The notes beneath the pieces are model-generated. The model ran no database searches, was not told the origin of the DNA, and saw nothing but the letters and a program-made list of their open reading frames with translations. Positions 5,701-55,400 of a DNA stretch of 64,000 nucleotides are shown here, one piece after another; position 1 is the first letter of the stretch; each line of letters starts with the position of its first letter. The DNA comes from Macrostomum lignano (lineage: Eukaryota), in the NCBI GenBank assembly GCA_002269645.1, contig NIVC01001519.1:62001-126000 (forward strand). Reading direction: 5' to 3'. A program made the translations under genes and the position numbers.

Positions 5701-7456
5701 ACTGGGGCCTACTAGACTATAAAGTACTATGATCACTGACTTATAACTTTATTGAACCATTGAGTAAAATGGAAAATGATATTTTTATCTTGCATATTTT
5801 TGCTTTATACCTTAATTACTTTATAATATAACATTTAAAAAATCAATACCAACAAGCTATTTAAGGTAATATAATGGTATCATTAGTTTATGTTCATTAG
5901 AGTCAATAGTTATGCAAGGACAGTAGGTTAAGTCTAAAAGTAGCATTGTTTTGTTAATTTTTCTACCAGAACCATATATTTATTTATGTACACATTATAG
6001 GTGTGTTTCTGATAATTTACTACTCAATTTTCAAGAAAATTTTCATTCATATTTAAACTTCTTAATCTCATCTCTAACAGACTGCTCCCAACATGCCAGA
6101 GTACCAGAGCAAAGCCAAAAAATTGTTTCGCCGATTGAATTCTACTTCACCATCAAGGTGCAGTCTGGAATCTGGTGCCTACACATTCCAGTAAGTTCTT
6201 GTACCCCTCACACTGATCTAGTGATCTTTGATAGCTAATCTAAGAAACTGCAAATCTTGTATTATTATTATTATTATTAAATGCCTACACGAGGGGTTGC
6301 TGATTTTTTTTTTTCTGATATTATTTAAGCCAAACTAATGAATATACAATCAACAAAATTGTAAATAAATACAAAATTAGCTCGTTTTGTCTTATTTTTA
6401 AAATTCTGCCTCTAACTTGACCTTTAGAGGCTTCAATGACCCCATTTAATCTTCGTGTCATCAGCCTTGGTCACCATTGAGCTCCTTGACCCCATATTAC
6501 CCCAGAACTTTGATCACTACTGAGTTCCGTGACCCCATGTGACCCCTAACCTTCAATCACTACTGAGCTCCATGACCCCATATGACCCCTGACTTTGATC
6601 ACTACTAAACTCCGTGACCCCATATGAACCCTGACTTTGATCACTGCTGACCTGCGTGACCCCATATAACCCCTGACCTTTGATCACTACTGAACTCCGT
6701 GACCCTAAATGACCCCTGACTTTGATCACTACTGAACTCCGTGACCCTAAATGACCCCTGACTTTGATCACTACTGAACTCCGTGACCCCATATGAACCC
6801 TGACTTGGATCACTACTGACCTGCGTGACCCCATATGACCCCTGACCTTTGATCACTACTGAACTCCGTGACCCTAAATGACCCCTGACCTTTGATCACT
6901 GCTGAGCTCCGTGACCCCATATGACCCCTGACCTTTGATCACTACTGACCTCCGTGACCCCATATGACCTCTGGCCTATTTGAACAGCTACCAGATCGAC
7001 TCGGGAGTCTGCTACCTGGCCCTTGCCGGTTGCAATTTCTCCAAACGCCTGGCCTTCTCCTACCTGGACGATCTCCGTCGCGAATTCGCCAACCAATTCG
7101 ACACCGTCCGGGTGGACTCGGTGGCCCGGCCCTACCATTTCATAGAATTCGAGCAGTACATCAAGAAGGCTCGCCGCTCATTTGTTGACAGCCGGGCCAA
7201 CCGCAATCTGGCCATGCTGGGCGCCGAGCTGCAGGACGTCCAACGGATTATGGTAGAAAATATGGACGAAGTGCTGGCCAGGGGCGAGTCCTTAGCAACG
7301 CTGGACGACAAGGCTAGCCACCTGTCGTTGCTGTCGCGCAGGTATCGCGACGATGCAGCGTATTTGAATTTGCGCTCGGTTTACGCCAGATACGGCATAG
7401 CCTGCGTTGTCATTTTGATGCTGTTCTGCTACATCTACTTCAAATTCCTGTGGTAG
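2738..7456 (+). CDS. SEC22B: Vesicle-trafficking R-SNARE SEC22b; exons 2738-2809, 6081-6190, 6988-7456 (216 aa)
   Basis: MILLTMIARVSDGLPLAASIHNEE | TAPNMPEYQSKAKKLFRRLNSTSPSRCSLESGAYTFH | YQIDSGVCYLAL...ELQDVQRIMVENMDEVLARGESL...C-terminal TM. Longin + SNARE + TM; GT-AG introns in phases 0 and 2 join in frame (651 nt). Confidence 0.95.
3042..3339. mobile_element. MITE with 14-bp TIRs and 8-bp TSD (hAT/P-type), in SEC22B intron 1
   Basis: TIR CATACATGCGCAAC (3042-3055) and GTTGCGCATGTATG (3326-3339); both flanks read TGTATAAT (3034-3041, 3340-3347). Confidence 0.85.
3149..3212 (-). other. Degenerate 28S rRNA fragment (helix 68-71, R2/I-PpoI target region) inside the MITE
   Basis: Minus strand GGGTAAACGGCAGGAGTAACTATGACTGTCTTATTAAGCCAAAATGCCTCGTCAGCTACTTAGT vs the conserved LSU sequence GGGTAAACGGCGGGAGTAACTATGACTCTCTTAAGGTAGCCAAATGCCTCGTCATCTAATTAGT (recalled). 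Confidence 0.85.
3690..4330. repeat. AT-rich inverted/degenerate repeat region (foldback-like)
   Basis: GCCTACAATGCTTTTTCCTATAGCA (3738-3762) is the reverse complement, with one mismatch, of TGCTATAGGAAAAAACATTGTAGGC (4059-4083). Degenerate GCAAAT/AAATCT subrepeats on either side. Confidence 0.55.
4361..4383 (+). other. Short 28S helix 70-71-like fragment
   Basis: AATTGCCTTGTCATCTAATTAGT vs LSU AAATGCCTCGTCATCTAATTAGT (2 mismatches in 23 nt). Confidence 0.5.
6480..6972. repeat. Intronic minisatellite, ~42-bp unit, abutting the SEC22B exon 3 acceptor
   Basis: Tandem TTTGATCACTACTGAACTCCGTGACCCTAAATGACCCCTGAC variants. Confidence 0.95.
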
Positions 7457-14000: not shown

Positions 14001-17000
14001 AATAAAAAGTTTTACCCAGCTGGTTGCATTTCTCTTTGACCAAACAGAAATCGGAAATACCTCGCTTCGACATTCTCAACGCGCCGCCAATTGAAAGCGA
14101 AAATCGTCGCGAACTCAGCAAATCGCCTAGCGTTGGGTGAGTCGCCGTAGTCTTTGTGTCCGTGTTGGCGTGTCTTTGTGTCCGTCTTAAAACGTGTCTT
14201 TGTGTCCGTCTTGGTGTGTCTTTGTGTCCATCTTGGCATGTCTTAGTGTCCGTCTTTACGTGTCTTTGTGTCCGTCTTGGCGTGTCTTTGTGTCCGTCTT
14301 AAAACGTGTCTTTGTGTCCGTCGGTGTGTCTTTGTGTCCATCTTGGCGTGTCTTTGTGTCCGTCTTTACGTATCTTTGTGTCCGTCTTGGCGTGCCTTTG
14401 TGTCCGTCTTGGCGTGTCTTTGTGTCCATCTTGGCGTGTCTTTGTGTCCGTCTTTACGTGTCTTTGTGTCCGTCTTGGCGTGCCTATGTGTCCGTCTTGG
14501 CGTGTCTTTGTGTCCGTCTTTACGTGTCTTTGTGTCCGTCTTGGCGTGCCTATGTGTCCGTCTTGGCGTGCCTATGTGTCCGTCTTGGCGTGTCTTTGTG
14601 TCCGTCTTTACGTATCTTTGTGTCCGTCTTGGCGTGCCTTTGTGTCCGTCTTGGTGTGTCTTTGTGTCCATCTTGGCATGTCTTTGTGTCCGTCTTTACG
14701 TGTCTTTGTGTCCGTCTTGGCGTGTCTTTGTGTCCGTCTTAAAACGTGTCTTTGTGTCCGTCGGTGTGTCTTTGTGTCCATCTTGGCGTGTCTTTGTGTC
14801 CGTCTTTACGTATCTTTGTGTCCGTCTTGGCGTGCCTTTGTGTCCGTCTTGGCGTGTCTTTGTGTCCATCTTGGCGTGTCTTTGTGTCCGTCTTTACGTG
14901 TCTTTGTGTCCGTCTTGGCGTGCCTATGTGTCCGTCTTGGCGTGTCTTTGTGTCCGTCTTTACGTATCTTTGTGTCCGTCTTAGCGTGTCTTTGTGTCCG
15001 TCTTTACTTGTCTTTGTGTCCGTCTTGGCGTGTCTTTGTGTCCGTCTTGGCGTGTCTTTGTGTCTGTGGTGATGGGGCTCAAGGGCTCGGTCCTTTCGTG
15101 CCCCTTTCCCAGACCCGGGTTCGCGTACTGACCCTGGCTGCGGTCCTCCACTGACACGCGTACGACGCGGTGTCCGTCGGGACTAGGCTGCTCGAGCGTA
15201 CGACGCACTTAATCCCCCTAAGGTGCCTAGTACAGAGGCAGACCCAAATGACTTGCAAATTGGAAGGCTTACCAGCCGCGATTTCGGTCGTACAACAAGA
15301 CACAGCGCCGTCAGAGCAGTGGTAGCATTGATCGATATTCATTTAATTGTATTGGTATCGCAATTACCGCTGGCACAATCACCGGGGAGCCACGACGATG
15401 ACGAGAATGGGGTCTCAATGGGGTCCGAATAAATAGGCAGCAAACTGGGGGTTGAGGGCGCGGGATAAAGGCAGAAAAGGGGGCTTAGACATCAGCATAG
15501 GAAAAACATGAGCCGTACCAGCCAATCGCCGGGGCGCAGCACGGCAGACTGGGACTGGCAGCCAATCACAAACAGGGGCGGGGAAGCAAAGCTAACAAAA
15601 GAATGGGGCGGGGGCGCACACAGAGCAAGGGGGGGTTGACTAAACGGAAAAGGCCTAGGCAGGGAGGGGGGTACGCACGCGCAGAAGTGCAGGTGGGTGA
15701 GTCAGAAAATATCTGAGGAGGGGGGTGTGGTGTTCGTGTGGCCAAGCAATCTAAAGTTTCTCTTGGCGGTCGCGTGTATTATAAAGAATAGAATACTCTA
15801 TGGTACAAGCATAGATAAATGAAATGAACAGTCAGTCTGGGGATACCACATCCCTCCACCTTTAGTAAAATCAGTTCATTGTAGGGAAACGAATTGGCCT
15901 CCTCAGTACAGTCTGTGGTCGGAGTCCACTTCTGCGCATTGTTCTTGGATCACACTGTGGTATTTCGAATGCGTCCCTCTTTTCTCGCTGACTGTCGCTC
16001 ATTCCTCCTCCACCAGAAAACGTTACCAGAGCCTCGTCAGATTCTGAGTCTGGGAATATCTTTCTGGCCTTGTTAACGTGGCGCTTCTTGATTGTGCCAC
16101 TTTTGTTCTCCAGGATCAGCAGTCCTCCGACTCGCTTCCTTACGTAGTATTGCTCTGTACCAAAAAAACTATCGTACTTGTTCCTGGCTTCCCTTTCAAT
16201 CACTACTGTGTCACCTGTTTTGATGTCGCAGTCACGAGCGTTCCGATTAGCGTAGTTGGACATTTTTTTCTTTTGTAGTCGGCGTCTTTATCTTTCTGCT
16301 TAATCAAAGGATCTATTGTCTCGTCGTTCATTTGAGGAAGTTTTGTCCGCGCGCTACACCGAAAGAATAGGCTTGCTGGCGCTACGCCTGTTGCTCTCAT
16401 CGGTGTTGTTCTGTAGGCGTGCAAGAAGATTTGCAACTCCTCTTCAAAACTTGATCCATTCAAAATTCTGGATCTTCTGATGACTTTGATGACTTTCATT
16501 GAATCTTTCCACCTCCCCATTTGCTGCTGGGTGACGCGGAATTATCCGTGAGTGAATGACGCCTTGATTGTTAAGGTATTCGTCAACGACTTTCGAACAG
16601 AAATTTGTTCCGTTGTCTGAGACGAGTTCTTTCATTGGTCCAAATAGTGAAATCACTTTCTTTAGAATTCGCTTCTGTGCGCTTCATGATGAACACTAGA
16701 GGAAATCTCGAGTGGTAGTCGATGAAAACTAGCAGGTTGCTACCATTCGGAAGTGGTCCTTTGAAGTCCATTGCCACTTTGTCCCACGGCTTATCCGGAA
16801 TTTCCGTTGGCACAATTGGGATCCGACTTCCTTTTTTCGTTGTGTGGATGCACACATTGCATTTCTTTCAAAAGATCTCCACGTCTTTGCTTATACCAGG
16901 CCAAAATACGGTACTTCGCAGTCGTTCTTTGGCTTTGGAAATGCCTTGATGTCCTTCATGGGCAATTAACAGAGCTTTTTGTCGCAGACTCTTCGGCAAG

Positions 17001-20000
17001 ACAATGCGGTCTTCGTACAGGAGAATTCCATTCTGCTCCGACAGCTTATTTCTTTCTGCAAATAGTTTGTTGTGCTTTTTCCATGTTCCTCCTGATACTA
17101 TTGATTCCAGTGCCTCGACAATTTCATCATCAATCGCAGAATCTTTTCGGATCTGCTCTAAGCTCAGAGCTGTGCTTACTGCGCTTTCAAGTTTGCTGTT
17201 AATGAATGCGATGTCGCGTCGATTGCAGAGTGTGTCGTTTGGTGTTTTCACCGGTTGTCTCGACAAAATATCTGCCTCGTTAGTGTCGCCTGGTTCATAT
17301 TTTATCTTAAAGTTGAATGGTTGCAATCTCATTGCCCAACGCTCAATTCTTGGTGGTGGTTTTGAGTTCGATGCAAAACATCCGAGTAAGGGTTTATGAT
17401 CCGTTATTACCGTAAATTCGGTTGCTCCTTTGAGAAAGTGAGAAAATTTCTCGCATCCCCATTTAATTGCCAATGCTTCTCGCTCGATTTGACTGTATCG
17501 AGTCTCCACGTCTGTGAGAGTTCTACTGGCATAGCAAACTGGCTGTAGATTTCCATCTTTCTGCCGCTGAACCAAGATCGCACCAAGACCGACAGGACTA
17601 GCGTCTACTCGCAGCTGAGTTTCTCGCCCTGTTCCAAAGTACGCGAGCGTTTCCGTTGAGCTGATCGCTGCTTTGATGCTGTTGAAAGAATTTTCTTGTT
17701 CTGGACCCCATTCCCAGGTCTTTCCTTTCTTTGTGAGGTCATTCAGAGGCTTCGACAAGGTTGCTAGGTTTGGTACGAATCGAGCAACAAATTGTGCTAG
17801 ACCAAGAAACGATTTAACTTCACTTGGATTGCACGGTGGTTTGAACATTTGAATAGCTTCCGTTTTCTTCTCGTGGATGGTTATTCCCTTCTCGGTTAGA
17901 ATAAATCCCATAAAAGTAGCTTTACTCATTCCAAATTTGCATTTTTCCTTTCCAACGGTCATGCCGTTCTCCACGAGCCTTGCTAAGACCTGCTTTAGCC
18001 TGTTGTTGTGTTCCTTGACGTCCTTTCCATACACAATTATATCATCCTGAATATTTAGCAGTCCTTGTAAACCAGCCAAAACTTTTGTCATGTAGGCTTG
18101 AAGATAGAATGACGAGTTGACCCAACCCATCGGCAATCGTTTGTACCTGTACAGCGGTTGTCCAGGGATTCCTGTTGAGAACGTTGTCAGATGTCTAGAT
18201 TCACTGTCCAGTTCAATTTGATGGAACATTTTCTTGCCATCAATGTAGCTGAAGCAGCTTGCTTCTCCCATATTGGTGAGCTGATCATCCAGAGATGGAA
18301 TAGGAAATTGTAGCTTTTCCGTTGCCTCGTTCAAGTTTCGTAAGTCAACGGTCAGTCGTACCTTACCAGTCTTTCCTTTTGGGACGACAACTAGCCGCGA
18401 AAGCCATGCACTGGGACCATCAACTTTTTCTATGATTCCTGAGTTTTCCTGCTCTTCCAGTTCTTGTAAGAGTGCTTCTCTGAGATGGGCGGCTACTCTT
18501 GTTATCGATTGTGATGTCGGCGTGCTTCCTTCCTTCAGAGCAATGGTCACTGCTGGCTGCGTGGTCAATCTACCAACTCCCTGAAATACCTCCTGATGAT
18601 CTTTCAGAATTCGTTCGATTTCTTCGTTCTTCTTCTCAATCTGATTGACCGTTAACTGCAGCAGATTCAAATCGATGCTGTCTTGACATCCGAGTATTGT
18701 CTCAGCGTTGATACAATATCATATCATACGATATTGTTTACTACGCTTTACTGAGTCTCCAGCCATCACAACCAGTGTTGTTGTTCCCAAGACTTCCAGC
18801 GCCTTTTCGACATATAGGCATATAGTCTTGGCTTTTCTGATCTGTTTAGGATGGTATCCTTTGACTTCACTGACTCCCACGATTTCATACTTATCAAACT
18901 TGCTGAAGATCCGGAGTCAATGAGCACTGTACTCTCAATGCCATTGATCTTCACTTTGGCTCTTGCGCCTGCTGAGTCCTTCGATTCAGTCATAGCGACA
19001 GTGTTGATTTCTTCGCCATTCGATTCGTCGTTGCCATTTTGCTCTTCCGGTTGCTCAGACATCTGAATATTTCTGGTTTTTATTCTGCTCCCTGTCTTTA
19101 GACATAGTCTACATGCTTGCTTAATGTGCCCTTTCTTATGGCAAAATTTGCATTCTATGTTACGAGCGAAGCAATCCCAGGGTCGGTGACCTGTTCTGTT
19201 GCATCTGTAGCAGACTCGATCGCACTTGTTGGTGTTTAGAGTTGATGTCCGCTTGTCAGTCTGTTTGAACTGTAGCTTGTTAGTTGGTCTGTTGTCAATT
19301 TTGCTGACTGTGTTGCGCGTCTCATTGGTTGGTTTTTCAATGTCTTTAGCCTGCGTTTTTGTTGCTTCGAAATTCTTGCTGATTTCTACTGCCTTCTTTA
19401 AGGTGAGGTCAGAGCCTTCCTTTAGCAGCAGAGTCCTTAGCGGCTTTGATGTGCTCTTTAGGACTATCAGATCGCGTAGCAGACGATCCTCGAAGCTAAG
19501 CTTCACTGTACTCTCGTTTCCTCCAGGCTTGTACTCGACGTGTAAGTTGCAGTACTTTGCTGCACTTTTTAGACGACTGTAGAAGGAATCAAACGTTTCT
19601 CCCTCTATCTGGTTAACTGACAGCAGCTTGTAAGTCTCATGGACGCTATTGGTTGCACCTTGGAATAAAGAGCTGAGCGCTTCCTTCGTTGCTTCGTAGC
19701 CTTGTTCATAGCTTACGGTTTGCAACAGCTTTCGGATTTTCGGCCCTGCTAGAAGCAAGAATGTAGCTTGCTTCTTTTCGTCGGCTATTCCTTGCACTTC
19801 CATGAACAGCTCGACTTCCTGCACATACTCGTTCCACTTATCTGCATTGTTGAGCGGATCTTCGTCTGGATCGAAATGCCCAATGCTGTAGAACTGTGCT
19901 GAGGCCATCCTGCGAGGTATTTTCTTAATAGTACATCCGTAGCTTTTCTCTTTTCACCGCTGCCACCAATGTGGTGTTCGTGTGGCCAAGCAATCTAAAG

Positions 20001-36237: not shown

Positions 36238-37230
36238 ATGTATGAATTCATTTTTTCATTGAGCTCTCAGAACATTCGAACCTTTGCCTCTTCGCAATCG
36301 CAGCTCATCATGCTGTCTTCTTCTTTTGCACTGCAGTTGCTTCTCAGCATCGTTTTCGGCGTCATCCTTGCCCTGGGAGCGTTCGGAAACTCGGTCGCTC
36401 TCATTGTTGCGGTGATTAAAAAAACTCCAGACAAAGTGGTCAACATCTACCTTGCTAACCTGGCTGTTGCTGACCTGCTTCATCTTGTCTCCATTGTGCC
36501 GCTCATCCTGGCAACGGGAAGTGGATGGCAATGGGGAAGAGGCCTGTGCCAGATCAACTACGCGGTCAAGTATACCAGCTTTACTGTCATCGCCTTCACC
36601 ATCACCGCAATGGGATTCGACTGCTGCGGCGACATGGTGAGGCCTGAACTTTACAGACTGCGCAGTCCCAGATTTGTGTGGGGCCTCATGCTGGGCCTGT
36701 GGATCCTGAGCACCTCAGTTATGAGTTGTATTGGCGCGTATGCCACAGTTAGCCCATCGACCGGAAATGGAAGTGCTGTCATTGACCACTGCGGCCACTT
36801 CTTGGACAATTACAACAGTGATAGGGCAGACCAACCCTCGTCGAGCTTCGGTTTAAAAATCGCTGCTATCTGCATCTGGCTTGTCCTACCGTTGGTTCTT
36901 CTCTTTGGTTTCTACCGCAGCATCCGGCGCAACACGGACGCTCAGGCGCCTGGCGCAGCGTCGCGTTTTAAACGCGTCCTGCTCCCAGTAATCGTTTTGG
37001 CTGCGAGCTACTCAGTCTGCACCCTGCCGCAGTGGCTCTCTATGTTGCTGAGTTGTTGGAACCTGATCCCCGAGCACGTGTCTGATTCCTTAACTCGCTC
37101 CTCGGCGCTGCTTGTCTACCTGAACAGCGCCTGCAGCGCATTGCTCTACGCCTGGCACAACCCGTCGCTTCGTCGAGGCCTGCGTCGCATCTTCGTCTGC
37201 CCCTGCCGCTGGCAAAATAGATCTTGCTAA
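36238..37230 (+). CDS. Intronless class A (rhodopsin-like) GPCR of peptide-receptor type
   Basis: Seven hydrophobic segments; GAFGNSV (TM1), NIYLANLAVADLL (TM2), WQWGRGLC (ECL1), CTLP (TM6), YAWHNPSLRRGLRRIF (helix 8). Start could be 36238 or 36310. Confidence 0.9.
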   Translation: MYEFIFSLSSQNIRTFASSQSQLIMLSSSFALQLLLSIVFGVILALGAFGNSVALIVAVIKKTPDKVVNIYLANLAVADLLHLVSIVPLILATGSGWQWGRGLCQINYAVKYTSFTVIAFTITAMGFDCCGDMVRPELYRLRSPRFVWGLMLGLWILSTSVMSCIGAYATVSPSTGNGSAVIDHCGHFLDNYNSDRADQPSSSFGLKIAAICIWLVLPLVLLFGFYRSIRRNTDAQAPGAASRFKRVLLPVIVLAASYSVCTLPQWLSMLLSCWNLIPEHVSDSLTRSSALLVYLNSACSALLYAWHNPSLRRGLRRIFVCPCRWQNRSC

Positions 37231-39298: not shown

Positions 39299-40188
39299 TC
39301 GCTATGTTTTGTCGCCTTGAAGTGACATGTCTCCCCATTGCTTTTACTGGGGGGGGGGGCATGTCCCCCCTGTCCCCCCGGTGGCGACGCTCCAGAGATA
39401 TACTTCTTAATACATTTTCATATCGTTCATTAAGGTTCCAGAACTATAGATTTCCAAGAGGTGGCTTAAAAAAGTTTTACTATGTATAAATTTTCATCAA
39501 CAAAAAGATGTATAGTCATACTCAACAACATTAAAAAGTCGCCAGCTTTGAGAGAGCGCAGTAAATTCCAGCTCAGTATTGACTTTTGAGTGACGCAACT
39601 TGCGCCACGCGACGCAGAGTTGGGCTGGGTGGGGAAGGATAGGGAAAAGCGGAGGTCGAAGACTGGATGGATTGAAGCTTCCGGCGCCCGGTTTTCATTG
39701 TTTTTTTCAAGCATTTTTTAATATCAAAACGGTTGGCCAGGTGAAAGACTCTGCTCTCTGGGGCAAAGGCCGTGGCGACTTCCAATGTTGCTGAGTACAT
39801 ATTCTGGTTCTGGAATCGAGCCATGAAAACCCTCATTATAGTTGATCATGCGCTCGTAATACTATTACGCTCCTATGTACATTTAATTTAGGATTGTGCA
39901 ACTGTGTCATAAATAACAATTTTAATTAGTTGGTAGATTGCTACTCTATGCTAAGCCCATGTAGCTCGTATGTACTCTTGACCATGAGAGTGTACCGTCG
40001 CGATCTGATTGGTTGGAAGAATTGAAGATTTCAATCTGAAACTGTGCGCAAGTGCGATGCCTCTCGATCCATGCCAGTCTTGGCTAGTTAATAAAACCTG
40101 ACTACACTCAAAGTGATATGAAGAACCCATTAGAAATCGTGTCAGAAATTATATTCTCTAGTTGCGAGTATTTAAATCATCCAAAATC

Positions 40189-40722
40189 ATGACAAAAATC
40201 TCGGAGCGGAGTGCTTTGTGGTGCATAGTTGGAGTCGTATTATTAGGCGCCGCACAGATTGTTCACTGCAATAGAAACTATTATAGCGATGGTTACAGCG
40301 GCGGCAGATACGGCGATGGACAAGGCGGCTACGGCGGTGGTTGGGATGACTACTATGGTGGTGGACGTAGTGACTACAGCGGTGGACGGAGTGACTACAG
40401 CGGTGGACGGAGTGACTACAGCGGTGGACGGAGTGACTACAGCGGGGGACGAAGTGACTACAGCGGTGGACGGAGTGAGTACAGCGGTGGACGGAGTGAC
40501 TACAGCGGGGGACGAAGTGACTACAGCGGTGGACGGAGTGAGTACAGCGGTGGACGGAGTGACTACAGCGGTGGACGAAGGGGCTACAGCGGTGGACGGA
40601 GGGTCGGTGAAGAAAGCTACTCTGGAAACGACGTTTCTTCATCAGGAAACAACGGTGGTGGCTATAAGTTTAAGCCCAATAGCATTTTCCACTATGCCGG
40701 AAAGAATACTGGAAAGTATTGA
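40189..40722 (+). CDS. Secreted Gly/Tyr/Ser-rich repeat protein (177 aa), candidate neuropeptide precursor
   Basis: Signal-peptide-like ALWCIVGVVLLGAAQIVHC, ten S(D/E)YSGGR units, GGRR sites; synonymous third-position variation between units. Confidence 0.75.
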   Translation: MTKISERSALWCIVGVVLLGAAQIVHCNRNYYSDGYSGGRYGDGQGGYGGGWDDYYGGGRSDYSGGRSDYSGGRSDYSGGRSDYSGGRSDYSGGRSEYSGGRSDYSGGRSDYSGGRSEYSGGRSDYSGGRRGYSGGRRVGEESYSGNDVSSSGNNGGGYKFKPNSIFHYAGKNTGKY

Positions 40723-42286: not shown

Positions 42287-45200
42287 ATGGCCGCTGCTGT
42301 CGTCGCAGCCGCCGCCCGCCGCAGCTGCCAAACCACATCGAAGACGCCGCTTTGCATCGAGTTCTACGACTTCTGCCGCAAAGGCGATGTAAGCAGGGTT
42401 CAATTCTACCTTAGTGCGGGCCTGTCTGCTGACTGGACTAATGAGAGAGATCGCAATAGGAGTTTGTTGATGGCCACAGCCTGGAAGGATAGCGAGGAGG
42501 TCTGCCGGCTGCTCATTGAACAGAAAGCTCCCCTGGACCATCAAGATAGCTCGGGGCTCAGTGCGATGCACATCTGCGCCAAGCAGAATTCGATTCGCGT
42601 AGCCAAGTTACTATTGCAAGCCGGTGCCAACGTCAACTTGCTGGCTGAGAACGACATTACCGCGCTGATGATTTGTGCTGACTTGGGCCACACGGAGCTA
42701 GCCGAAGTGTTGTTAAAACAGCCGACAATCAATCTCGACCAGCAAAGTAGTCGCGGATTTACAGCTCTAATGAAGTCCGTGTTTGAGAACAGCATTCAGC
42801 TAGCTCACCTGCTCATCGATCGTGGCGCCAAACTTGACCTGGCCTCTAATAGCGGCTTCACCGCGCTGCATCTTTGCGCCCAGCTGGACAGGCGCGAGAT
42901 CGCACAGCGCATCCTGGCCAAGGCACCGCCTGAGATGGTTAACCAGCCAACTAAGCCGGAGTTCAAAGGCAACACGGCATTAATTTTAGCCTCGCTTAAT
43001 GGCCACGTGAAGATGGTGCAGCTGCTGCACGAGAACGGTGCCGATCCTAATTTGGCCAACAGCGAGGGTTGCACAGCCTTGGACCAAGTGTCTGGCAGCG
43101 ATTCGAAGGAGCTGCTGAAACTGCTGCAGAGCTGGAGTAGTCAGAGCAGGAAGTGAGTTTTGTTAGCGTTGATTTGATTGCATGGTTCAAGTTTATATTT
43201 AAGATAAGGCGTATATACCTAACGTGCAGATGCTTGATCTGCTGTGGAGAATCTAATTCTTTTGGGAGCAATCAATGGAGCAACAATTGATTCTTTCAGT
43301 GGGCAATTATCGATTCTCCTGGTCGGTGGGCAATCACTGGAGTCTGGAGCAATAATTGATTATTTCAATGGGCAATTATCGATTCTTTCGGTCGGTGGGC
43401 AATCACTGGAGCAATAATTGATTCTTTCAGTGGGCAATTATCGATTCTCTCGGTCGGTGAGCAATCACTGGAGCAACAATTGATTCTTTCAGTGGGCAAT
43501 CATCGATTCTCTCGGTCGGTGGGTAATCAATGGAGCAATCATTGATTATTTCAGGGGGCAATAATCGATTCTCTCGGTTGGTGGGTAATCAATGGAGCAA
43601 TCATTGATTATTTCAGTGGGCAATAATCGATTCTCTCGGTTGGTGGGCCGAGAGCAATAATTGATGTTTTCAGTGGGCATTTGCAGTGTGACCACACGAC
43701 CCGAATGCTGATAAACAAAGGGCCGCTCGTCTCCGATTTTGTTCTTTGATTACAAAGAAGGATGCTCGTTCCGGTTCACAGATGAGCTGGCGGAGGTTAT
43801 CCCTGTCGCCTTCCCAGACAGTAAAATTGCTGAAAACTATGCTTGCGCTAGAACGAAGACGAACTACCTGATCTGCCTGTCGAGAATGCTACATCACTAT
43901 GTATCCTAGCTTGCATCCATTATTTGGCTATTTTACTATTTTAGTTTCTGAAAAAGCACATATAGCCATTAAAACACTCCAGAATCCTGCTGCGCTATTT
44001 TTTACTGCTCTATTTTTTATAAATTCTTTGTGGTCACACTGGTGGGCAATCATAGATTCTTTTGGTGGGCAACCATTGGAGAAATAATTAACTCTTTTAA
44101 TGGGCAATCTCGATTCTCTCACACAATAGAGATATACTCATACTGCGCTGCATATTTCCATCTTTTCTAGTAATAAAAACGACATGCTATATAAACACAC
44201 TACTTTAAGCATACTTAATCACTTTGCAGCAAACCGACAGCACCGGCAGGCCTCAGCCTTGCCGACGCCATTCGCAAAGACGATCTAGAAAGCGTGCGGA
44301 AGCTGGCGAAATCGGAGACAGTGACCAACGTAGATAGAACAACAGGCTGGACGCCTCTGATGCTGGCTGCCGGACTGGGCAAGACGGAGTCATTGAAAGT
44401 GGTACTTTCGCTAATCGGCACCAGTAGTAGTCTCGACTTTCATGTCAATAGACAGGCGGAAGACTCAACTAAAGCAACTGCCCTGCATGCCGCTGTCCAG
44501 TGCGGCAGTGAGCCCTGCGTCAAGTTGCTGTTGCAAGCTGGTGCCAGCCTGGCTGTGTTAAACGCCCAGGGTTCAACTCCGCTGTCCTTGTGCGCCGACC
44601 TGGGCTCGGCCACGGATGTCGCAGAGCTAATTATTGAACGAGCCAGCGCGGACGAATTGATGAAACCAGGTGCTGACGGCCGGCTCTGTCCGGCCAATTT
44701 GGCCGCCGTCCGTGGCCATCTGGACGTGCTGCGCCTGATGCTCAATCGACTTCGTAAACTCGACGATAATTCAAGTCGCCAAACATGGCTGCCACAGATT
44801 CTCGAAGAAGCCAAAGCGGCTTGGCAATTCGAAGCGGCAAATGCTGTGCTAGAGGAAATGTAAGACCATAAATTGACTTTAATTGTCTAGTCTCTAGGCC
44901 CTTATGCGAAGCTAATTACGAGCTCGTACATGTACAAGAAATTGCCTCTAAAATGTAGCGACAACGTGAAGTGAATAACTATATGTCATGCTATAAAGAA
45001 ATGGAAATGTCTTGTGAGTAATAACTAAAAATGTAAGCTGTCAAGACTTTGGCTCCCATTAACGCTATCGCATTCCACTCTCGCACTTCTCCCAGGCCTA
45101 AAAACGCGAAGAACAATGAGGAGCTGACAACTGCCAGACTGTTTAAGGCAGCGATGGATGCCAACCCGGAAAAGGTGAAGGAACTGCTCGATTCTAGCCA

Positions 45201-46980
45201 AGCGGTGCGAGATAGCATCAACAAACGAAGCCAACAGGATCCAGGATGGACCGCTTTGATGGCTAGCGCCTGGAATGATGATGAAAGTACTTGTAAGCTG
45301 CTGCTAGATCGAGGCGCGGATCCCAATGTCACGGAGCAAAAGCTTGGCATCACAGCGCTGCACATCGCGGTGCAGCAGAACAGCCGTCGGGTTGCCAAAG
45401 TCCTCTTGGACCAGAAGTCCATCGGCCTCAATGCCAGGAGCAAAGACAATCGGACTCCGCTGATTCGAGCAGCTTGGCTTAACCATATGGACATCGCCAA
45501 GCAACTGTTAGACCGGCATGCCAGCGTCAACGCCCAAGAAATTGATGGATTCAGCGCGCTGCACTTTTGCGCCCAAGAAAATCTGCTGGAGCTAGCGAAA
45601 CTGTTGATCAGTCACGATGCCGACCTGGAACTGCAGACAAGCTCTAAGAAGAACTGCAACACCGCTTTCACCCTAGCCGCGGTAAAGGGCCACACGGACA
45701 TGCTGGAACTGCTAGCCAATGTTGGGGCCGATATCTACTACAAGAGCTCGCAGGGCGACGCCATGGATCTGGCCAAGCGGGCGAAGAGAACCGCGGCTAT
45801 TGAGATGCTGGTCAAGCTCGACAGGCAGCGAAAATGCAGCTGGGAGGCCGCTACGGCGCCAATACCGTCAAGGTTAGATAGCTTTTACAAACGAGGAGAG
45901 TACCTCGTTGCTCATTCATTTTTAGATTTTTATGCAATCCAGCTCGTATCGTGAGGTCATATTTTCTCAGTTTTATAAGAAATAAATTTTGCTTGGCTGA
46001 ATTTTTAAAATCTTCCTCATTATCTGTATCTCTGTCTAATTTTTTACAGCAGCACCACCAGCAATGAGACAGCAGGAGTCAAGATGCAGCTTGACGCTGG
46101 GAGTGCTCAGGTAGCTGAAGTACCTTCAGTGGAGATGGACAGTTCGAACTTGAACTCCAGTGTTGTGCCGCCTATATGCGGCTACTAGTACTGCATGCGC
46201 TCCAATCCGCGTGGAATGTGCGTCATCATCAACAATGAGCAGTTCTCAGGCGAATGTGAATCTCGACCCGGCTCAAGGAAAGATGTAGCCAGTCTGGAGC
46301 GACTGTTTAAGGACACACTCAAGTTTCGGGTTCAAGTCCACCAGAATCTGGACGCGTGCGACATTCTCGCCCTGATGCGATCGCTAGCTGCCCGCGATCG
46401 TCACACGAAATTTGACTGTTTCGTTGCTTTCATCATGTCGCACGGTGAATACGACCGCGTTCTTGGCTGCGACGGCGAGTGGGTCGCCCTAGATGACATG
46501 TTCGCGCCATTCTACTGCTGTGACTCTCTGCAGCAGAAGCCGAAGCTGTTCTTCCTACAGGCCTGTCGGCCTCTCGGCGTCGGCGCCAGCGTGACAGCCG
46601 AGTCAAACGTCGACCAGCCGGTGTCGTCTGTTGGAAGCAACAACAGCAGTCCAAGCAATTTCGATGCCTCCAACAGGCGGTTAAACAGACAACTCTCCGA
46701 GAAGCTTGACTTTCTATTTGCCTACTCGGTGACTAGGGGTGACTACGCTCTGAGATGCCCGACGACAGGAAGTATTTACATACAAAAATTGTGTGAAGTG
46801 TTCAGAGAAAACTACAAGACTCATCACCTCTGCACTATGCTTAATATGGTGCGCCAAACGCTGGGTCGCCTCCCGATGTACGTCAATCAGCAACCCCAGG
46901 AGCCCATGTTTAACTTGCCATCCGAGACCACGCAGCTGCGGGGCGAAGTCTGGTTTAAGGATCTGGAGAACGACCAATAG
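42287..46980 (+). CDS. Ankyrin-repeat-caspase fusion protein; exons 42287-43152, 44230-44859, 45096-45872, 46050-46110, 46189-46980 (~1041 aa)
   Basis: Three ANK blocks (TALxxA/TPLxxA..GH..LL..GA) joined by phase-2 introns with donors GTGAGT (43153), GTAAGA (44860), GTTAGA (45873) and pyrimidine-rich CAG acceptors. Caspase domain with PRGMCVIINN, RPGSRKD, IMSHG, KPKLFFLQACR, DFLFAYS, GSIYIQKL. Total 3126 nt, in frame. Confidence 0.8.
43262..43670. repeat. 62-bp minisatellite in ANK-caspase intron 1
   Basis: Tandem GAGCAATAATTGATTCTTTCAGTGGGCAATTATCGATTCTCTCGGTCGGTGGGCAATCACTG. Confidence 0.92.
43763..43880 (+). pseudogene. hAT-like transposase fragment
   Basis: Translates ..FTDELAEVIPVAFPDSKIAENYACARTKTNYLIC, resembling the FPDS.IA..F.C.RTK motif of hAT-type transposases as recalled. 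Confidence 0.5.
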
Positions 46981-49459: not shown

Positions 49460-52400
49460 CTAGTTCTTCTTAGCCACGGACTTGGTCGAGTCTCGCAGTT
49501 TCCTGCGACTCCCATAATTGCCTTCGTTTTCGCATTTTGGCGTCGGCGTGCTCACTTCGTCGCGGCCCGGCCTTGGGAAATTGTGATAGACGGGCACCTC
49601 GGCGGATGACGGACCATCGCCCGCGGTCCACTGGTCATAGCCTGTCGTGTTGTCTCTCATTATGTCTTGAATTCCGACTACGCTGACGTTGGACGAATTT
49701 AGATCCACTCTAGTGTGCCTGTTAACAGTGCCGCAGCACAGCATCGCTATGGCAGCCCCTCGGAACTCCCAGTTTAGCAAGCCGAGACAGAGTAGGACAA
49801 AGAATCCTTGACAAGCGTTCAGAATGACGAAAACGTACTGCACGGGTAGGGTGTACCATAGAGTCTGCGGAACAGCGAACAGCCAGGCGGCGGTCAGTAG
49901 TGGCGCCAGCAAGGCGCACTCGTGCGACTGGTGCTTAAGCTCGGTTTGAATATCGCGTCGCTTGATAGCCTGCTGGCTGAGGTTGCACAAGACTATCAGA
50001 GTGACCAAAATTGACAGTAGGCCAAACAGTAGCAGCGGTCCCAGGAATGACCAAATATAGATACCATCCAGCCAGCACTGGGGGCCGTAGCCAAACGACT
50101 GAAAGTTGACCCCGGCGACAACGGCCACAATAACCACGGGAAGGATCCATGCTATTGGAAGAAGCCATTTCAATCGACCGATAATGACGCCTTTGACTAC
50201 AGCGTGGAACAGCCAAATTGATGCGGCTAGCAGCATCGCTAGGCCAGCGACAAAGAACAGATGCATAACAATAGAAACCGCCTTGCAAAATTCGTCGCTT
50301 TGTTTTGCTATTCCAGTCAGTAGAAAGCTTAGCTGACCAATGAAAATTGCTCCGGCAAGGTTCAGATACAGAATGTACAGTTCATTGTGCAGCTTTTTGT
50401 CGCGAGCAACAATTATTATAAAGAAGATCAGACACAAGAGCGAAATTCCCGTGAGAATGTACTTCAAGTAAGCTAGAATTATCTCGTGTATGTTGTTGTC
50501 GTATTCAGGCGCAGGTTGCATCAGCACTGCAAAGCTAGTCAGGTGGTTACAGCTGCATGTTACGCTTTTCTCGTCCTCGTACAGCTTGACACAGCCTTCG
50601 GTTGACCACATGCCTCTGCCGAAGGCTGAGCCACTAGCCTTTCTTGGGTCCCAGAAGACGCATCGAGTTTCAAGCTGCATTTCTTCTTTATTAATTTGAC
50701 TTTTTATGTTAGGCACAAACAATTGTAGAGTTAAATTTACAGGCTGCTCCATTTTCCTTGTCATTGCAACGGGAATGCTAGTTTTAATGGATACTACTCG
50801 ACTGTTGACGACTAGCACAATGCTACCGTTTGTAGCACTAGATAAGACGGTTTCATTCGTAGCAACGTTAGGGAGCAGGTCGCTAACCTGATTATAAACA
50901 ACGCAGGCAACTTTGACTTCAGTTCCAGCCTGTGTTAGACTAGTAAATAAGCTGATAGGAAGGAGCACGGTGTCGGTTGACTGCATCCACAGGCTGTGGG
51001 TTTGTTCCGTATAGCGCAGTGCGTCAACTGGGCGATCAATGCAGCTCGAGCTAATTAGTTGAGTGCTCCAGTGCATCAGACCCTGTGTAAAGGTCACAGA
51101 AGAGCAGGCGGTGGGCAGCTGGCCAGCGAGACGGAGTGCCAGAGACTCGATTGGGCCAAGCATCGCTGCTGGATTGAGCTTTCCAGAGTTGATCTGAGGT
51201 CGGAGTTGGTCCGCAAACTTTTTCTGCATCACGGCACTGAATGCTCGACTAAATGAGCGCAAACTAGTGGCCAATGACTCGTTGCTGGTTCCGTCTGATT
51301 TTACTTTTAAGTTTGCCGTAATGCGACTCAGAATATCAAACGCTGACTGAGCGAATTCGACACTCGTTCCTTTGGCATCCGCAGTACCAGCTATCACTTC
51401 GCAAGCGGAATCGGCCTCAGACTGGACTGAAAACCTACGACTTGAGTTGGCAATACTTGCGATATTGTCAAATTTATCGTCTTGGCATATTCCATAGATG
51501 TAAACGCTTTGACAGCTGCCCACAATGCAGGTTGTAAGCAGGCTATCCAGTTCAGTGGCGCAGTTACCTGTAAGCAGCTTCTTGTTCTTGGGCGGGTCCA
51601 GGCAATCAATCGGCGGTTCGTTCCAAAATACCAGATCGCTCATCAGCATAACTGCAGAAGGTGAGCCAAGCACAGCATTTGAAACTGTGGATGGCGCTAA
51701 ATTCTCGCTACTGAACTGAGTCGACGCCACGACTTGGACGCCATTCAAATAGAGTTCGACGACTGCCTTAGTAACACTAACTGCCAAGTTGAACCAGGAT
51801 CTAGTATGAATCTGCTGCTCAATAGAGCTGTCTCCAAGAGTGACTTGAGAAAGTTTTTCTGCAATACTCAGCTCCACACTAATTTTCACGATGTTTGAAG
51901 AAGCGGATTTCTTCTTTGCTCGAATGCGCAGCCCTTGGTTAGATGGATAGCCGGCCCGAAGAACATCCACGTACTCTTCCGTACCGATGGATTGAATCTG
52001 CAGCCAGAGCGATATTGTGAAGCCTTTAGGACAACCGGATCCAGAGAAGAGGCACACTTCAGTGCCCAAGTCAACAGATTCGGCTGCAACGAAGCGTCTA
52101 CTTCGATTGGCTTTATTTGCGTGGTTACTGTTTCCCGCAGAATGCATGGGAACATGAATGGTTTGCCTATCGTAGCAATTTGCGTCAAGATCTGTGGAAA
52201 GCTCGTCTGCACTGCCTAACGGCAAGTACTTCAGCATGATATCGCTAAAACAAGCGGCCGCTGCGTTTTTGCTCTTGTCATTGGGTCGGCCTAACAAGCC
52301 CGCTGTGTAGTTACCAATGTCATTATCTTCATTCCAACACAAAGTGCTTGCGTTTTCAAAATATGTAATAATGTAGTCATCGGCTTTAAGTAGTATACTG

Positions 52401-55400
52401 GCACTGGCGTACCAGAATACCTGCAGTGACACCCAGGTTGAGTAGTTAAATGGCGCCGAGGCTGTACAAGTTCTGTTAGGACTGCGAACTGTGACTTGAA
52501 CAAAAGCATCGCGAGTCAAGGCCACCGCTGTACCAATCGAGCCCGGGTTCTGACCACCTGTGCTAAATAGGTAAGCGGTATCTTCAGTTTTTGGCATAGT
52601 TGGCTTCATTACTAGCGTTAAAATGTACGACTTGCAATTCGAGGTATTGTAAAGACAGCTGTCTTGCGAGTTCTCCATAATAACATATGAGCCTCCTGTG
52701 CCAAGGGTGCACAGAGCTCCGTTTTCAGTGCCGTATTTGTCCGGGCCAAAGTCTGTGTTAACACCGTGCAAAGATTTTGGCTGGAGCTTTGACCACAGAC
52801 CCGCGACTGTCCAGTAGTCGTCAGCCAGGCGCAGAAGATCGTACTGGCTGCTTTGAATACCAAGAACGAGATTGCTTTGACTGCTCGTCAGGAGCTCCTT
52901 GTACCAGGCAGCAACTATAAACAGCAAGAATGAATCTCCTAGAGCGGCTGACGGATCCACCAATTTTCCCACAGTTAGTGCTCCAGCTGCAGTGCTGTCT
53001 CTGAACGTCCCACCAGATTCTCTGTACTCAAGACTGATGCTCACATTAGTACCATTAAGAATAATTGTAGGAAAGAAATTATCCTTTGAGAGAAGCAGAG
53101 CTACATTAGACCACCGATTGAGGCGCATCTTTACGTTGGATTTGGTCACCATTTTAGCAGTCCAGCCGGCTAGTTTGACCCAAGCTGCTAAGCTACCATC
53201 AGCGCTGATGTTCATTCCGAATCCTTCAAACGGATCGGCTTCATTGCCCATTGAAATTATTGTTAGGTCCGCTCCACTGTCCTTGCTGAGAAGCTTCATC
53301 CACAGAGTTACAATTACTTGTTTCCTGCAGGAGCTCAATCGCCTTGGGCATTCTTCGGCCCGGAATGCTTTAATGCCTACCTGTCCGTTGGTTCCGATCT
53401 TAGAGAACTTGGCTTCATAGCTGCTGACATTGCCAACTGGACCGATCGGCGTCGAGAGCAGTTTAGCCTGCTTTAACAGAAGGAATTCGGTGTCTATGAT
53501 CGCTTGGCCCCACGAAATCAAGTCAGAATCAATGTAGTAGCGGTTATTTAAGCTGCCAACAGACATTGCGAACTCCTCCGGGGTCATCCACCTGTCGTAG
53601 AAGACTATATCAGTAAATGAAAAATTGCCCATAAACCAGTCAGGATTGTCCTTCCAAGTGCTGTTCTGATCGTTGTCAAACCTGCCAACCACAGCTCGGA
53701 TGTGCTTATCGTAAGCCTTGTAACTGATGTCTGGCTGCAAATTGCGAATGCCGTAATCAGTACCATTTAAAAAGAACCGCATGCCCTGCTGTAAGTTCCA
53801 AGTAAAGCCAACATTGAACCACTCGTTCAAACCGAATCGATTGGCGTCGATTACAATAGTCCAATCTTGCCTGTCAATAGAGATTGACGCGCCTAGCAGA
53901 TTGCCTGTGGTAAATATGCTGATGCCTCTCGAGTCGAACGCTGAGGATCTGGACTCGCCAAAGTCGCCAGAGTTTAAAATGAACTGCATCTTCGAGGGAT
54001 TTACACTTTTTATATTCACCCATGCGTGCACAGTGAGACCGCTGATTTGGCAATCGCGCTGATACGGATCCGTGATGCACTTGCCAGACCAACTGATTGA
54101 ATTCTCGGTTGGTCTCAACTGAATGTCACTTCCCAGGAAGAACTGACCTAGCCAGTTAGAGTTCAGTCGGGCTATCATGGATTTATTGAATCTGTCTATT
54201 TCAAGCGTAATGGCAGAGTCGAACACGTTACGGAAGTTGAAGTAATAAAGCGATTTTAGGCTGTAGTTCTTCGTGTCCTTCAAAATAAGACTGTCGCCAG
54301 TGATTTCGGGATCCGTTGACCAATAAAGGGTAGCGTTGTGCACGTATCTAAACTGGTCGCGAGTGTAGCCCAGGAAGCGATGCGATTCAAAATCTTCGAG
54401 CGGTCGAAACCAAAAAACAAGATGGTTCAGAACGACTCCAGCCGGAGTTGGGCCACCTCCGACAGCCGAACCAATTGTGATGCTTTCGTTGAAGGTGGCA
54501 GCGATAGTTGTCGATGCATCAGATGCTGTAGCGCCGCATTGTACTCCGTTGACGTACAGCGTCAGTGACGGTGCAAGGCCTCGCTGGTCATAAATGAGAC
54601 CAATGTTGGTCCACTGCTGATTGGTGATCGGACAGCCAACAGACCTGCTTCCAGCTTTTGCTAGCAGTGACACAGACCCAGACGCACTGCTCAGTCTAAG
54701 CGAGATAATGTTGAACCTCAAAAACTCGGTATCGCCACTGGGTAGCGACTGAGTTACTTGCAACCAAATCGACACCGAAATTCCATTGGAACAGGGTGAC
54801 CCGGAAATTACGCAACTGTTACCAAGACTACCTACTTGTAGACTGGCTAGGTTGTTCTGAATGAGAAAGACAGCCTCCATTGCATCACCTCGCTGCAAGT
54901 TCGTGACCGTGACATTTGAGCTAGCCGTCTCTGGAGCCAACGCGCCCATGCCAACTCCGGCACGCAGGTAGAAGCCCGCCATCTCGTAGTATGGATTTGG
55001 GCCAGTGGTTGCGTAAGTAAAACGTTTCAAAATTGTCGAGTAGGCAAAGCTTGGTGCGCTGGGACTCGTTGGTTGAGGCGTGCTGACGACAGGCTGGTAC
55101 TTGATCAGCTTGTAAACTGCAAGCGCATAATTGTTAAGGCAGAATGTTTTTAGCCAAAGTCGAAATTTATAAAAGAAAATTAAATAGCTTGCCACTGAAA
55201 TCTAGCTTGACGTGATTTCAACAAGTATTTTCATAGTCTTTATCGTATTTTGCCTAAGTATATGTTTTAGTGTGAGCATTAGTGACTCTATATTTGTCTC
55301 CGTTTTGGCTTGCTCACTTAGTTTTAGACTTCGTGTAGCTATTTTAGATTTGACTTAGTGTTCTGTCGGTCTTTGTTTCTGTCTTAATCTGTTTTATAAC

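What the first reader, a model, noticed from the sequence alone, without database searches (positions are those of the whole stretch)
42287..46980. Caspase with a ~18-20 ankyrin-repeat prodomain instead of CARD/DED
Seen: the four ORFs listed separately are joined by GT-AG introns whose phases match exactly, giving one ~1041-aa frame of three ANK blocks followed by a caspase domain. The His (SHG) and Cys (QACR) dyad and both Asp-specificity arginine positions (RPGSRKD, ALRC) are present. Established: animal initiator caspases are normally recruited through death-fold prodomains (CARD/DED); ankyrin arrays are protein-binding or sensor scaffolds. Inference: this may be a self-contained sensor-protease, in which the ankyrin array detects a ligand or stress and activates the caspase without an apoptosome or DISC adaptor. 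It would be an unconventional cell-death or innate-immune module. I cannot confirm that it is undescribed.
Basis: partly seen in the sequence, partly recalled or inferred. Interest (0 to 1): 0.88.

Follow-up and report, generated by a model that had tools for sequence, protein, structure and literature searches.

The report
Known flatworm ankyrin-caspase, interrupted copy
This is one copy of a Macrostomum lignano (free-living flatworm) gene that joins about 20 ankyrin repeats to a caspase, a protein type already catalogued in flatworms, and this copy has a stop codon just before the caspase part.

Summary
The ankyrin-plus-caspase gene is real. The window is Macrostomum lignano DNA, 90-99% identical to two GenBank contigs. 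They encode three ankyrin blocks, a linker and a caspase domain with an intact Arg/His/Cys/Arg set.

Those 78 bases are coding in every sister copy and in a 56%-identical paralogue, and they hold the best-conserved linker motif. The window has a private C-to-T change that turns codon 804 (CAG) into TAG at 46186-46188. The proposed intron merely steps over this stop. This copy is therefore a young nonsense allele or duplicate, less likely a base-call error, and would give an ankyrin-only product.

The architecture is not new. "ANK caspases" were described in Schistosoma (2014) and across parasitic flatworms (Genome Biol Evol 2024). What is under-reported is that free-living M. lignano has at least five ANK-caspase lineages, contrary to that paper's claim of restriction to parasites. 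The sensor-protease idea remains untested. The ankyrin blocks are conserved rather than hypervariable, which favours a fixed binding partner.

The parts
42287..43152 (+). Exon 1: start codon and ankyrin block 1 (about 8 repeats including caps), aa 1-288
   Evidence: ORF and GTGAGT donor. Same boundaries as in PAA92194.1 and PAA51086.1. Ank HMM hits. Protein identical to UniRef A0A1I8G5A3 here.
43153..44229 (+). Intron 1 (GT..AG, phase 2), containing a 62-nt tandem repeat at 43268-43679
   Evidence: The repeat copy number differs in L001, where this intron is 1795 nt.
44230..44859 (+). Exon 2: ankyrin block 2 (about 5 repeats and a long C-terminal helix), aa 289-498
   Evidence: 99.8% identical to L002; the one difference is the private change D400N.
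44860..45095 (+). Intron 2 (GTAAGA..CAG, phase 2)
45096..45872 (+). Exon 3: ankyrin block 3 (about 7 repeats), aa 499-757
   Evidence: 100% identical to L002.
45873..46049 (+). Intron 3 (GTTAGA..ACAG, phase 2); holds an AATAAA at 45981
46050..46980 (+). Last exon as annotated in the sister copies: linker (to 46188) plus caspase domain plus stop codon. In this window it is interrupted by TAG at 46186-46188
46111..46188 (+). It is coding sequence in all sister copies and in the paralogue, and includes the conserved motif NSSVVPPI(C/R)GYQ
   Evidence: The AF2 model places ICGYQY in the confidently folded part (residues 61-70 of the query, mean pLDDT 90).
46186..46188 (+). In-frame TAG (codon 804). 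It is CAG (Gln) in L001, L002 and P0265, so the C>T change is private to this window
46129..46140 (+). VEMD, a candidate prodomain-removal site about 16 residues before the caspase fold (AEMD in PAA92194.1, FEPD in the paralogue). A second candidate is MQLD at 46084-46095. Inference only
   Evidence: Sequence shown. The region is predicted disordered.
46189..46977 (+). Caspase (Peptidase_C14) domain. Arg 46264-46266, His 46441-46443 (SHG), Cys 46564-46566 (QACRP), Arg 46753-46755 (ALRC). The intersubunit loop has Asp at 46612-46614 (SNVD) and 46663-46665 (SNFD)
   Evidence: AF2 with 113-sequence alignment gave pTM 0.75, and Foldseek matched caspase-7 with target-normalised TM 0.88-0.91.

Best explanation
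Shown. The locus is one haplotype or recent duplicate of the Macrostomum lignano gene deposited as BOX15_Mlig008053g1 / BOX15_Mlig008805g1. The gene has four exons. In the sister copies it encodes a 1067-aa protein. Three ankyrin-repeat blocks, one per exon and about 20 repeats in all, are followed by a roughly 47-aa disordered linker. A caspase-8/-7-like Peptidase_C14 domain with a complete catalytic and Asp-pocket residue set comes last. In this window a single C>T transition has changed codon 804 (Gln) to TAG. That codon lies in the conserved VVPPIxGYQY motif at the N-terminal edge of the caspase fold.

Inferred. Because the stop lies in the last exon, this copy would most likely yield an 803-aa ankyrin-only product, or be a null allele, in a genome that carries intact redundant copies. 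The intact protein most likely works as an initiator-type caspase. The ankyrin solenoid would replace the death fold as the module that binds a conserved partner, concentrates or releases the zymogen, and allows dimerisation-driven activation. Self-cleavage could occur at Asp sites in the linker (VEMD, MQLD) and in the intersubunit loop (SNVD, SNFD).
For: Identity: the window is collinear with M. lignano NIVC01000059.1 at 90-96% and with NIVC01003507.1 at 99.2% over 10 kb. The best protein match is PAA92194.1, 97% identical in the caspase domain.

Gene structure: the same three introns are used in both deposited CDSs, and the last exon is uninterrupted there. Those models come from an RNA-seq assembly that was cut at experimentally mapped trans-splice and poly(A) sites (PMC5730564).

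Stop codon: TAG in the window versus CAG in three other copies. The window's three private changes in exons 2-4 are all C:G>T:A transitions.

Selection: dN/dS between the window and L001 is 0.28 for the ANK part and 0.28 for the caspase part. The ANK blocks are 55-67% identical to paralogue P0118.

Caspase competence. There is no CARD or DED.

Redundancy: the DV1 line has extra large chromosomes and 180 Mb of duplicated blocks at 95% identity or more.

Against: There are no transcript or read data for this particular copy, so the TAG could be a base-call error, or it could be bypassed. No binding partner, activity or phenotype is known for any ANK caspase, so the mechanism is inference. The active-site pentapeptide QACRP (Pro for the near-invariant Gly) is unique among about 390 caspases gathered, so normal activity is not assured. 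Escape from nonsense-mediated decay for a last-exon stop is a rule taken from other animals and was not tested in flatworms.
Confidence: 0.7

Rival explanations
1. One reading: a 78-nt intron (46111-46188) is spliced out in this copy, rescuing a functional 1041-aa ANK-caspase. This would be 'intronisation' of a stop-bearing exon segment.
For: GT at 46111 and AG at 46187-46188 exist. The segment is 26 codons long, so the frame is kept, and the invariant Tyr follows directly.
Against: The same GT...(C)AG is kept as exon in the transcript-based model of L002, and the GT is absent in L001. The donor GTAGCT and the purine-rich acceptor ...GCGGCTACTAG are weak compared with the three real introns. 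At 78 nt it is far shorter than this gene's introns (177-1077 nt) and the species average of about 1.1-1.4 kb. Splicing would delete the most conserved linker motif and about five residues that AF2 folds with high confidence.
Confidence: 0.07
2. The TAG is a sequencing or assembly error. This copy is then an intact 1067-aa ANK-caspase like its sisters.
For: It is a single base. Three other versions, including the same exon-1 haplotype in an independent assembly (P0265), read CAG.
Against: The window looks like the cleaner assembly. It keeps a 1911-aa adhesion-GPCR ORF intact where L002 has seven 1-nt deletions. Window-L002 differences of about 0.3% look like ordinary variation rich in transitions.
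Confidence: 0.2
3. There are two genes, perhaps an operon. An ankyrin-only gene ends in intron 3 (stop at 45952-45954, AATAAA at 45981). A short-prodomain caspase gene starts at ATG 46084 (the M of MQLD) or ATG 46195, after a trans-splice acceptor at 46049.
For: AATAAA lies about 65 nt before a strong TTTTTTACAG acceptor, and in-frame ATGs exist. M. lignano trans-splices many mRNAs, and about 7% of its transcriptional units are polycistronic.
Against: The TBONE pipeline cuts at mapped trans-splice and poly(A) sites, yet it left ANK and caspase in one 1067-aa CDS in two copies. The exon 3 donor and the linker are conserved in frame in a 56%-identical paralogue. Five M. lignano lineages, a monogenean and the published neodermatan family share the same N-to-C order.
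Confidence: 0.03

Closest known systems
ANK caspases of parasitic flatworms (first noted in Schistosoma, Lee et al. 2014; defined as a clade in PMC11463336)
   Same: Ankyrin repeats are N-terminal to a caspase-8-like catalytic domain in a platyhelminth, with no CARD or DED. Function is unknown, and an initiator role has been proposed.
   Different: The host is free-living, although the paper states that free-living flatworms lack them. This protein has about 20 repeats in three blocks, against only a few Pfam-detectable repeats in the single neodermatan example seen here (Cichlidogyrus, 799 aa). In an NJ tree the window type does not join the neodermatan clade (1% bootstrap), whereas another M. 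lignano ANK caspase (PAA94436.1, 599 aa) does (83%).
M. lignano paralogues: A0A1I8I0Q1 (P0118), Mlig001045 (about 650 aa), Mlig000705/009621 (about 700 aa), Mlig019067 (599 aa)
   Same: All have ANK followed by Peptidase_C14 in one ORF. P0118 has the same three-block layout and an identical NSSVVPPIRGYQY motif.
   Different: They have different repeat numbers and different active-site pentapeptides: QGCRI, QACRT or QACRG against QACRP.
Caspase-8 / DED caspases and caspase-7
   Same: These are the closest catalytic domains by sequence (fish caspase-8; caspase-7 at E 1.7e-28) and by fold (target-normalised TM 0.88-0.91). The catalytic and S1-pocket residues are the same.
   Different: There are no death effector domains, so recruitment through FADD/DISC cannot apply. 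Pro replaces the Gly of QACxG.
Caiap (CARD plus 16 ANK; zebrafish)
   Same: An ankyrin array that physically engages a caspase and stabilises an active complex (PMC5662874).
   Different: Caiap works in trans and has no protease domain. Here the ANK array and the caspase are one chain.
Prodomain-only decoys derived from caspase duplicates (CARD16/17/18, short cFLIP). Comparison from my own knowledge
   Same: A recent duplicate or allele of a caspase gene, truncated by a stop so that only the recruitment domain is made.
   Different: Those decoys are fixed and functional. Here the stop is one private SNP with no evidence of expression, fixation or selection.
Sanderia malayensis (jellyfish) ANK-caspase-ANK-caspase and the Alitta virens ANK caspase
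   Same: They have the same domain pairing outside flatworms.
   Different: They have short ANK arrays and probably arose by independent domain shuffling.

Membership tests
Caspase (MEROPS C14A / Pfam PF00656) | Peptidase_C14 domain above the curated threshold, and a caspase fold | tested here: met
   162.3 bits against a cut-off of 21.4. AF2 pTM 0.75, with target-normalised TM 0.88-0.91 to caspase-7.
Caspase (MEROPS C14A / Pfam PF00656) | His-Cys dyad and the Asp-pocket Arg/Gln/Arg | tested here: met
   The R of SRPGS, the H of SHG, the Q and C of LQACRP and the R of ALRC align with caspase-7. All are invariant in A1. The residue after Cys-Arg is Pro rather than Gly.
Caspase (MEROPS C14A / Pfam PF00656) | Catalytic domain reachable by translation from the gene's start codon | tested here: not met
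   In this copy, TAG at codon 804 (46186-46188) precedes the domain. The feature is met in the sister copies.
Caspase (MEROPS C14A / Pfam PF00656) | Cleavage after Asp | not testable with these tools
   Needs recombinant enzyme and peptide substrates.
Platyhelminth ANK caspases (PMC11463336) | Ankyrin prodomain and caspase domain on one polypeptide | tested here: met
   Met for the gene in its sister copies, whose CDS is transcript-based. In the window the two parts are separated by one stop codon.
Platyhelminth ANK caspases (PMC11463336) | Catalytic domain falls in the monophyletic ANK-caspase clade next to DED caspases | tested here: inconclusive
   NJ on 249 columns. Neodermata including the Cichlidogyrus ANK caspase: 100%. 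With Mlig 599-aa added: 83%. With the window type added: 1%. The method is crude and only one verified neodermatan ANK caspase was sampled.
Platyhelminth ANK caspases (PMC11463336) | Restricted to parasitic species (a property claimed by the paper) | tested here: not met
   M. lignano is a free-living macrostomorph and has at least five ANK-caspase clusters.
Death-fold initiator caspases (CARD/DED) | CARD or DED prodomain | tested here: not met
   No PF00619 or PF01335 hit; only Ank families upstream.
Death-fold initiator caspases (CARD/DED) | Monomeric zymogen activated by induced dimerisation | not testable with these tools
   Needs biochemistry.
Prodomain-only caspase decoys | Truncation retained and selected; the product inhibits the parent caspase | not testable with these tools
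   Only shown here: the stop is private to this window and one base away from intact copies.

The most novel reading that the evidence does not exclude
Macrostomum carries a lineage-specific, diversified set of caspases. A caspase-8-like protease would have been fitted with interchangeable N-terminal modules: five ankyrin types and a Ras/Roc GTPase type. This set would form an adaptor-free sensing and cell-death repertoire that predates flatworm parasitism. The stop-bearing copy in this window would then be an ankyrin-only regulator of its intact sisters, analogous to CARD-only proteins.
Probability: 0.12. Interest if true: 0.6.

Novelty: new member of a known kind. Interest (0 to 1): 0.3.

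Why it matters
As a claim of a new cell-death module it does not hold up, because ANK caspases are already named and this protein is already deposited. Its modest value lies elsewhere.

First, it corrects the published picture. A free-living, early-branching flatworm has ANK caspases, and one of them groups with the parasite clade. The ankyrin prodomain is therefore probably older than parasitism and is not an adaptation to it.

Second, M. lignano is a transgenic, RNAi-amenable model. This makes it the practical place to find out what an ankyrin prodomain binds and how such a caspase is switched on, which nobody has yet shown.

Third, the window gives a cautionary example. A phase-perfect GT-AG 'intron' can be nothing more than a path round a nonsense mutation.

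Tried and rejected
- Word-indexed protein searches were of limited use. With the linker plus caspase as query, the search found no self or Macrostomum ANK hits and no Ank-bearing caspase. With P0184 as query it returned only P0184 itself, because low-complexity words filled the candidate list. With the profile A1 it again missed the Macrostomum proteins. The exhaustive HMMER scan is what found them.
- Exact look-ups of the exon-5 ORF and the exon-1 ORF found nothing. No independent assembly of this exact haplotype could therefore be inspected for the TAG.
- The single-sequence AF2 model of the 1067-aa protein was unusable (pLDDT 41). Nothing can be said about whether the ANK array docks on the caspase.
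- Literature searches for the Mlig gene identifiers, and for Macrostomum caspases beyond PMC11463336, found nothing. No supplementary files were held for that paper.
- I first mislabelled a kinase-caspase (P0209) as possibly from Macrostomum. It is a fish RIPK1-like protein.
- Pfam found no ankyrin repeats in several neodermatan caspases that cluster with the Cichlidogyrus ANK caspase. The neodermatan sample of verified ANK caspases here is therefore a single sequence.
Full report
1. What is in the sequence.

Joining 42287-43152, 44230-44859, 45096-45872, 46050-46110 and 46189-46980 gives 3126 nt and 1041 codons, with GT..AG at every junction and consistent phases. Pfam places Ank/Ank_2 repeats over roughly aa 30-740 (E 3.6e-81). 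It places one Peptidase_C14 domain at aa 786-1020 (E 1.9e-47) and finds no CARD or DED. A repeat HMM built on the protein finds 15 canonical repeats. With the capping units they form three blocks of about 8, 5 and 7 repeats, one block per exon.

The caspase domain aligns best with caspase-7 among solved structures (E 1.7e-28). The R of SRPGS, the H of SHG, the C of QACRP and the R of ALRC sit on caspase-7 R87, H144, C186 and R233. The descriptive part of the finding is therefore largely accurate.

2. Where the window comes from.

An exhaustive HMMER scan with the caspase domain gave a 1067-aa top hit, 97% identical, with the caspase at residues 805-1067. This is PAA92194.1, hypothetical protein BOX15_Mlig008053g1 of Macrostomum lignano. 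PAA51086.1 and UniRef A0A1I8G5A3 are in the same cluster.

The window is collinear with M. lignano contig NIVC01000059.1 (L001) at 90-96% nucleotide identity, including introns and intergenic DNA. From intron 1 onwards it is 99.2% identical over 10 kb to NIVC01003507.1 (L002). A0A1I8G5A3 is identical to the window protein through exon 1.

The window is therefore M. lignano, a free-living macrostomorph flatworm. It represents one of several near-identical copies. The DV1 line carries extra large chromosomes, and its assembly has 180 Mb of duplicated blocks at 95% identity or more (PMC5730564).

3. Gene model.

That annotation derives from a genome-guided RNA-seq assembly that was cut into genes at experimentally mapped trans-splice and poly(A) sites. 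It therefore provides indirect transcript evidence that the ankyrin exons and the caspase exon belong to one mRNA.

In both sister copies it runs without interruption from the equivalent of 46050 to the stop codon, giving 1067 aa.

- In L001 the proposed donor does not exist (CTA rather than GTA).
- In L002 the identical GT...CAG is exonic.
- In paralogue A0A1I8I0Q1 (P0118, 56% identical in the caspase domain) the stretch NSSVVPPIRGYQY is conserved residue for residue. It is the best-conserved part of the linker.
- An AF2 model of linker plus caspase (113-sequence alignment, pTM 0.75) folds ICGYQY with a mean pLDDT of about 90.

The window's only peculiarity is one base: CAG>TAG at 46186-46188, which is codon 804 of the 4-exon CDS. 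Compared with L002, the window has three private changes in exons 2-4: D400N, Q804* and a silent TGC>TGT. All three are C:G>T:A transitions. The fourth 'intron' is therefore a frame-preserving detour round a nonsense codon, not a feature of the gene.

4. Is the stop real?

I cannot see reads. The window nevertheless looks like the better assembly. It keeps a 1911-aa adhesion-GPCR ORF intact where L002 has seven single-base deletions. The remaining window-L002 differences (33 substitutions and 11 indels in 10 kb) look like ordinary variation. I put a real nonsense allele or duplicate at about 0.7, a base-call error at about 0.2, and splice rescue below 0.1.

The rest of the CDS is intact. Between the window and L001, dN/dS is 0.28 for the ankyrin part and 0.28 for the caspase part. 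The gene family is therefore under purifying selection, and the stop must be very recent.

5. Rival: two genes or an operon.

An AATAAA lies in intron 3 (45981), about 65 nt before a strong acceptor, and in-frame ATGs exist at 46084 and 46195. M. lignano does have polycistronic units. Three observations make this unlikely:
- The boundary-cutting annotation left the ORF fused in two copies.
- The linker is conserved in frame in the paralogue.
- The same ANK-then-caspase order recurs in five M. lignano clusters and in a monogenean.

6. How it probably works.

Shown: the catalytic domain has everything a caspase needs. There is no death-fold domain. The ankyrin blocks are as conserved as the protease between paralogues, at 55-67% against 54% identity.

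Inferred: the ankyrin solenoid is the recruitment or regulatory module of an initiator-type caspase. It would bind a conserved partner, or the caspase itself as Caiap's ANK domain binds caspase-1. Activation would follow from induced proximity, with self-cleavage at Asp sites in disordered segments. Candidate sites are VEMD and MQLD in the linker and SNVD and SNFD in the intersubunit loop.

The pentapeptide QACRP, with Pro for a near-invariant Gly, is unique among about 390 caspases collected and might alter activity.

For this copy, a stop in the last exon should escape nonsense-mediated decay. That rule comes from other animals. The result would be an 803-aa ankyrin-only protein. Whether that protein matters is unknown.

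7. Comparison with what is known.

PMC11463336 (Genome Biol Evol 2024) names 'ANK caspases' and credits their first sighting to Schistosoma (Lee et al. 2014). It finds them in all parasitic flatworms and in one annelid, places them beside DED caspases, and states that free-living flatworms lack them. For M. lignano it reports only a kinase-like-prodomain caspase. The architecture is therefore described, although functionally uncharacterised.

The data here contradict the claimed restriction to parasites. M. lignano has at least five ANK-caspase clusters: the 1067-aa type, P0118, Mlig001045, Mlig000705/009621 and Mlig019067.

In a bootstrapped NJ tree of caspase domains:
- The neodermatan group, which includes the Cichlidogyrus ANK caspase, has 100% support.
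- The 599-aa M. lignano ANK caspase joins that group with 83% support.
- The window type plus P0118 form their own 100% pair, whose link to that clade is unresolved (1%).

This tree is crude and should be redone with likelihood methods. No paper in the library mentions these Mlig genes.

8. Verdict.

The gene and three of the four junctions are right. The fourth junction hides a stop codon. I file it as a new member of a known kind and rate its interest as low to moderate.

Noticed in passing
P0235 (PAA63380.1) and P0284 (PAA49772.1), M. lignano; not in the window: Caspases whose prodomain is a Ras/Roc-type small GTPase domain (Pfam Ras E 2.5e-33 and 5.1e-60, plus Peptidase_C14). The lophotrochozoan caspase survey does not mention them.
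   Followed up: partly
P0179 (PAA94436.1, M. lignano, 599 aa); not in the window: An ANK caspase of a free-living flatworm that groups with the neodermatan caspase clade (83% NJ bootstrap). This contradicts the published claim that ANK caspases are specific to parasites.
   Followed up: partly
P0173 (Acropora millepora XP_044178405.1), P0120 (Sanderia malayensis), P0209 (Paramormyrops kingsleyae): Other unusual caspase fusions appear among the nearest relatives. These are a GT4 'conflict-system' glycosyltransferase plus caspase, an ANK-caspase-ANK-caspase protein, and a RIPK1-like kinase plus caspase.
   Followed up: no
window 43268-43679: A 62-nt tandem repeat (6.6 copies, 87% matches) lies inside intron 1. 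Its copy number differs between gene copies, so intron 1 is 1077 nt here and 1795 nt in L001.
   Followed up: partly
L002 (NIVC01003507.1) compared with the window and L001: L002 is a mosaic. Up to intron 1 it resembles L001 (97-99.8%), and from intron 1 onwards it resembles the window (99.2%). This could be a recombinant haplotype or a chimeric assembly, with the switch in the tandem-repeat region.
   Followed up: partly
window 49460-55195 (-): A single 1911-aa ORF encodes an adhesion GPCR (three Laminin_G_3 domains, GAIN, GPS, 7tm_2). The GenBank contig L002 has seven 1-nt deletions in it, and the gene call there is only 729 aa.
   Followed up: partly
window 46564-46572: The active-site pentapeptide is QACRP. 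Pro in place of the near-invariant Gly is unique to this gene among about 390 caspases gathered. The paralogues have QGCRI and QACRT.
   Followed up: partly
window 16868-19908 (-): A gypsy-type LTR retroelement is present. Its pol ORF has RVT_1, RNase H and integrase zinc-binding domains, and a gag-like ORF with a CCHC motif lies next to it.
   Followed up: no
window 6980-7456, 11052-13322, 36238-37230, 40162-40722 (+): Neighbouring genes are a SEC22-like longin/synaptobrevin exon, protein-kinase exons interrupted by microsatellite-like repeats, an intronless rhodopsin-type GPCR, and a Gly/Tyr/Ser-rich repeat protein (GGRSDYS units). The window as a whole is rich in simple and tandem repeats.
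   Followed up: no
P0118 (UniRef A0A1I8I0Q1), residues about 1060-2049: The paralogue's database model continues for about 1000 aa past the caspase domain and picks up a PIRC1_2 domain. This is probably a gene model that merged with its neighbour.
   Followed up: no
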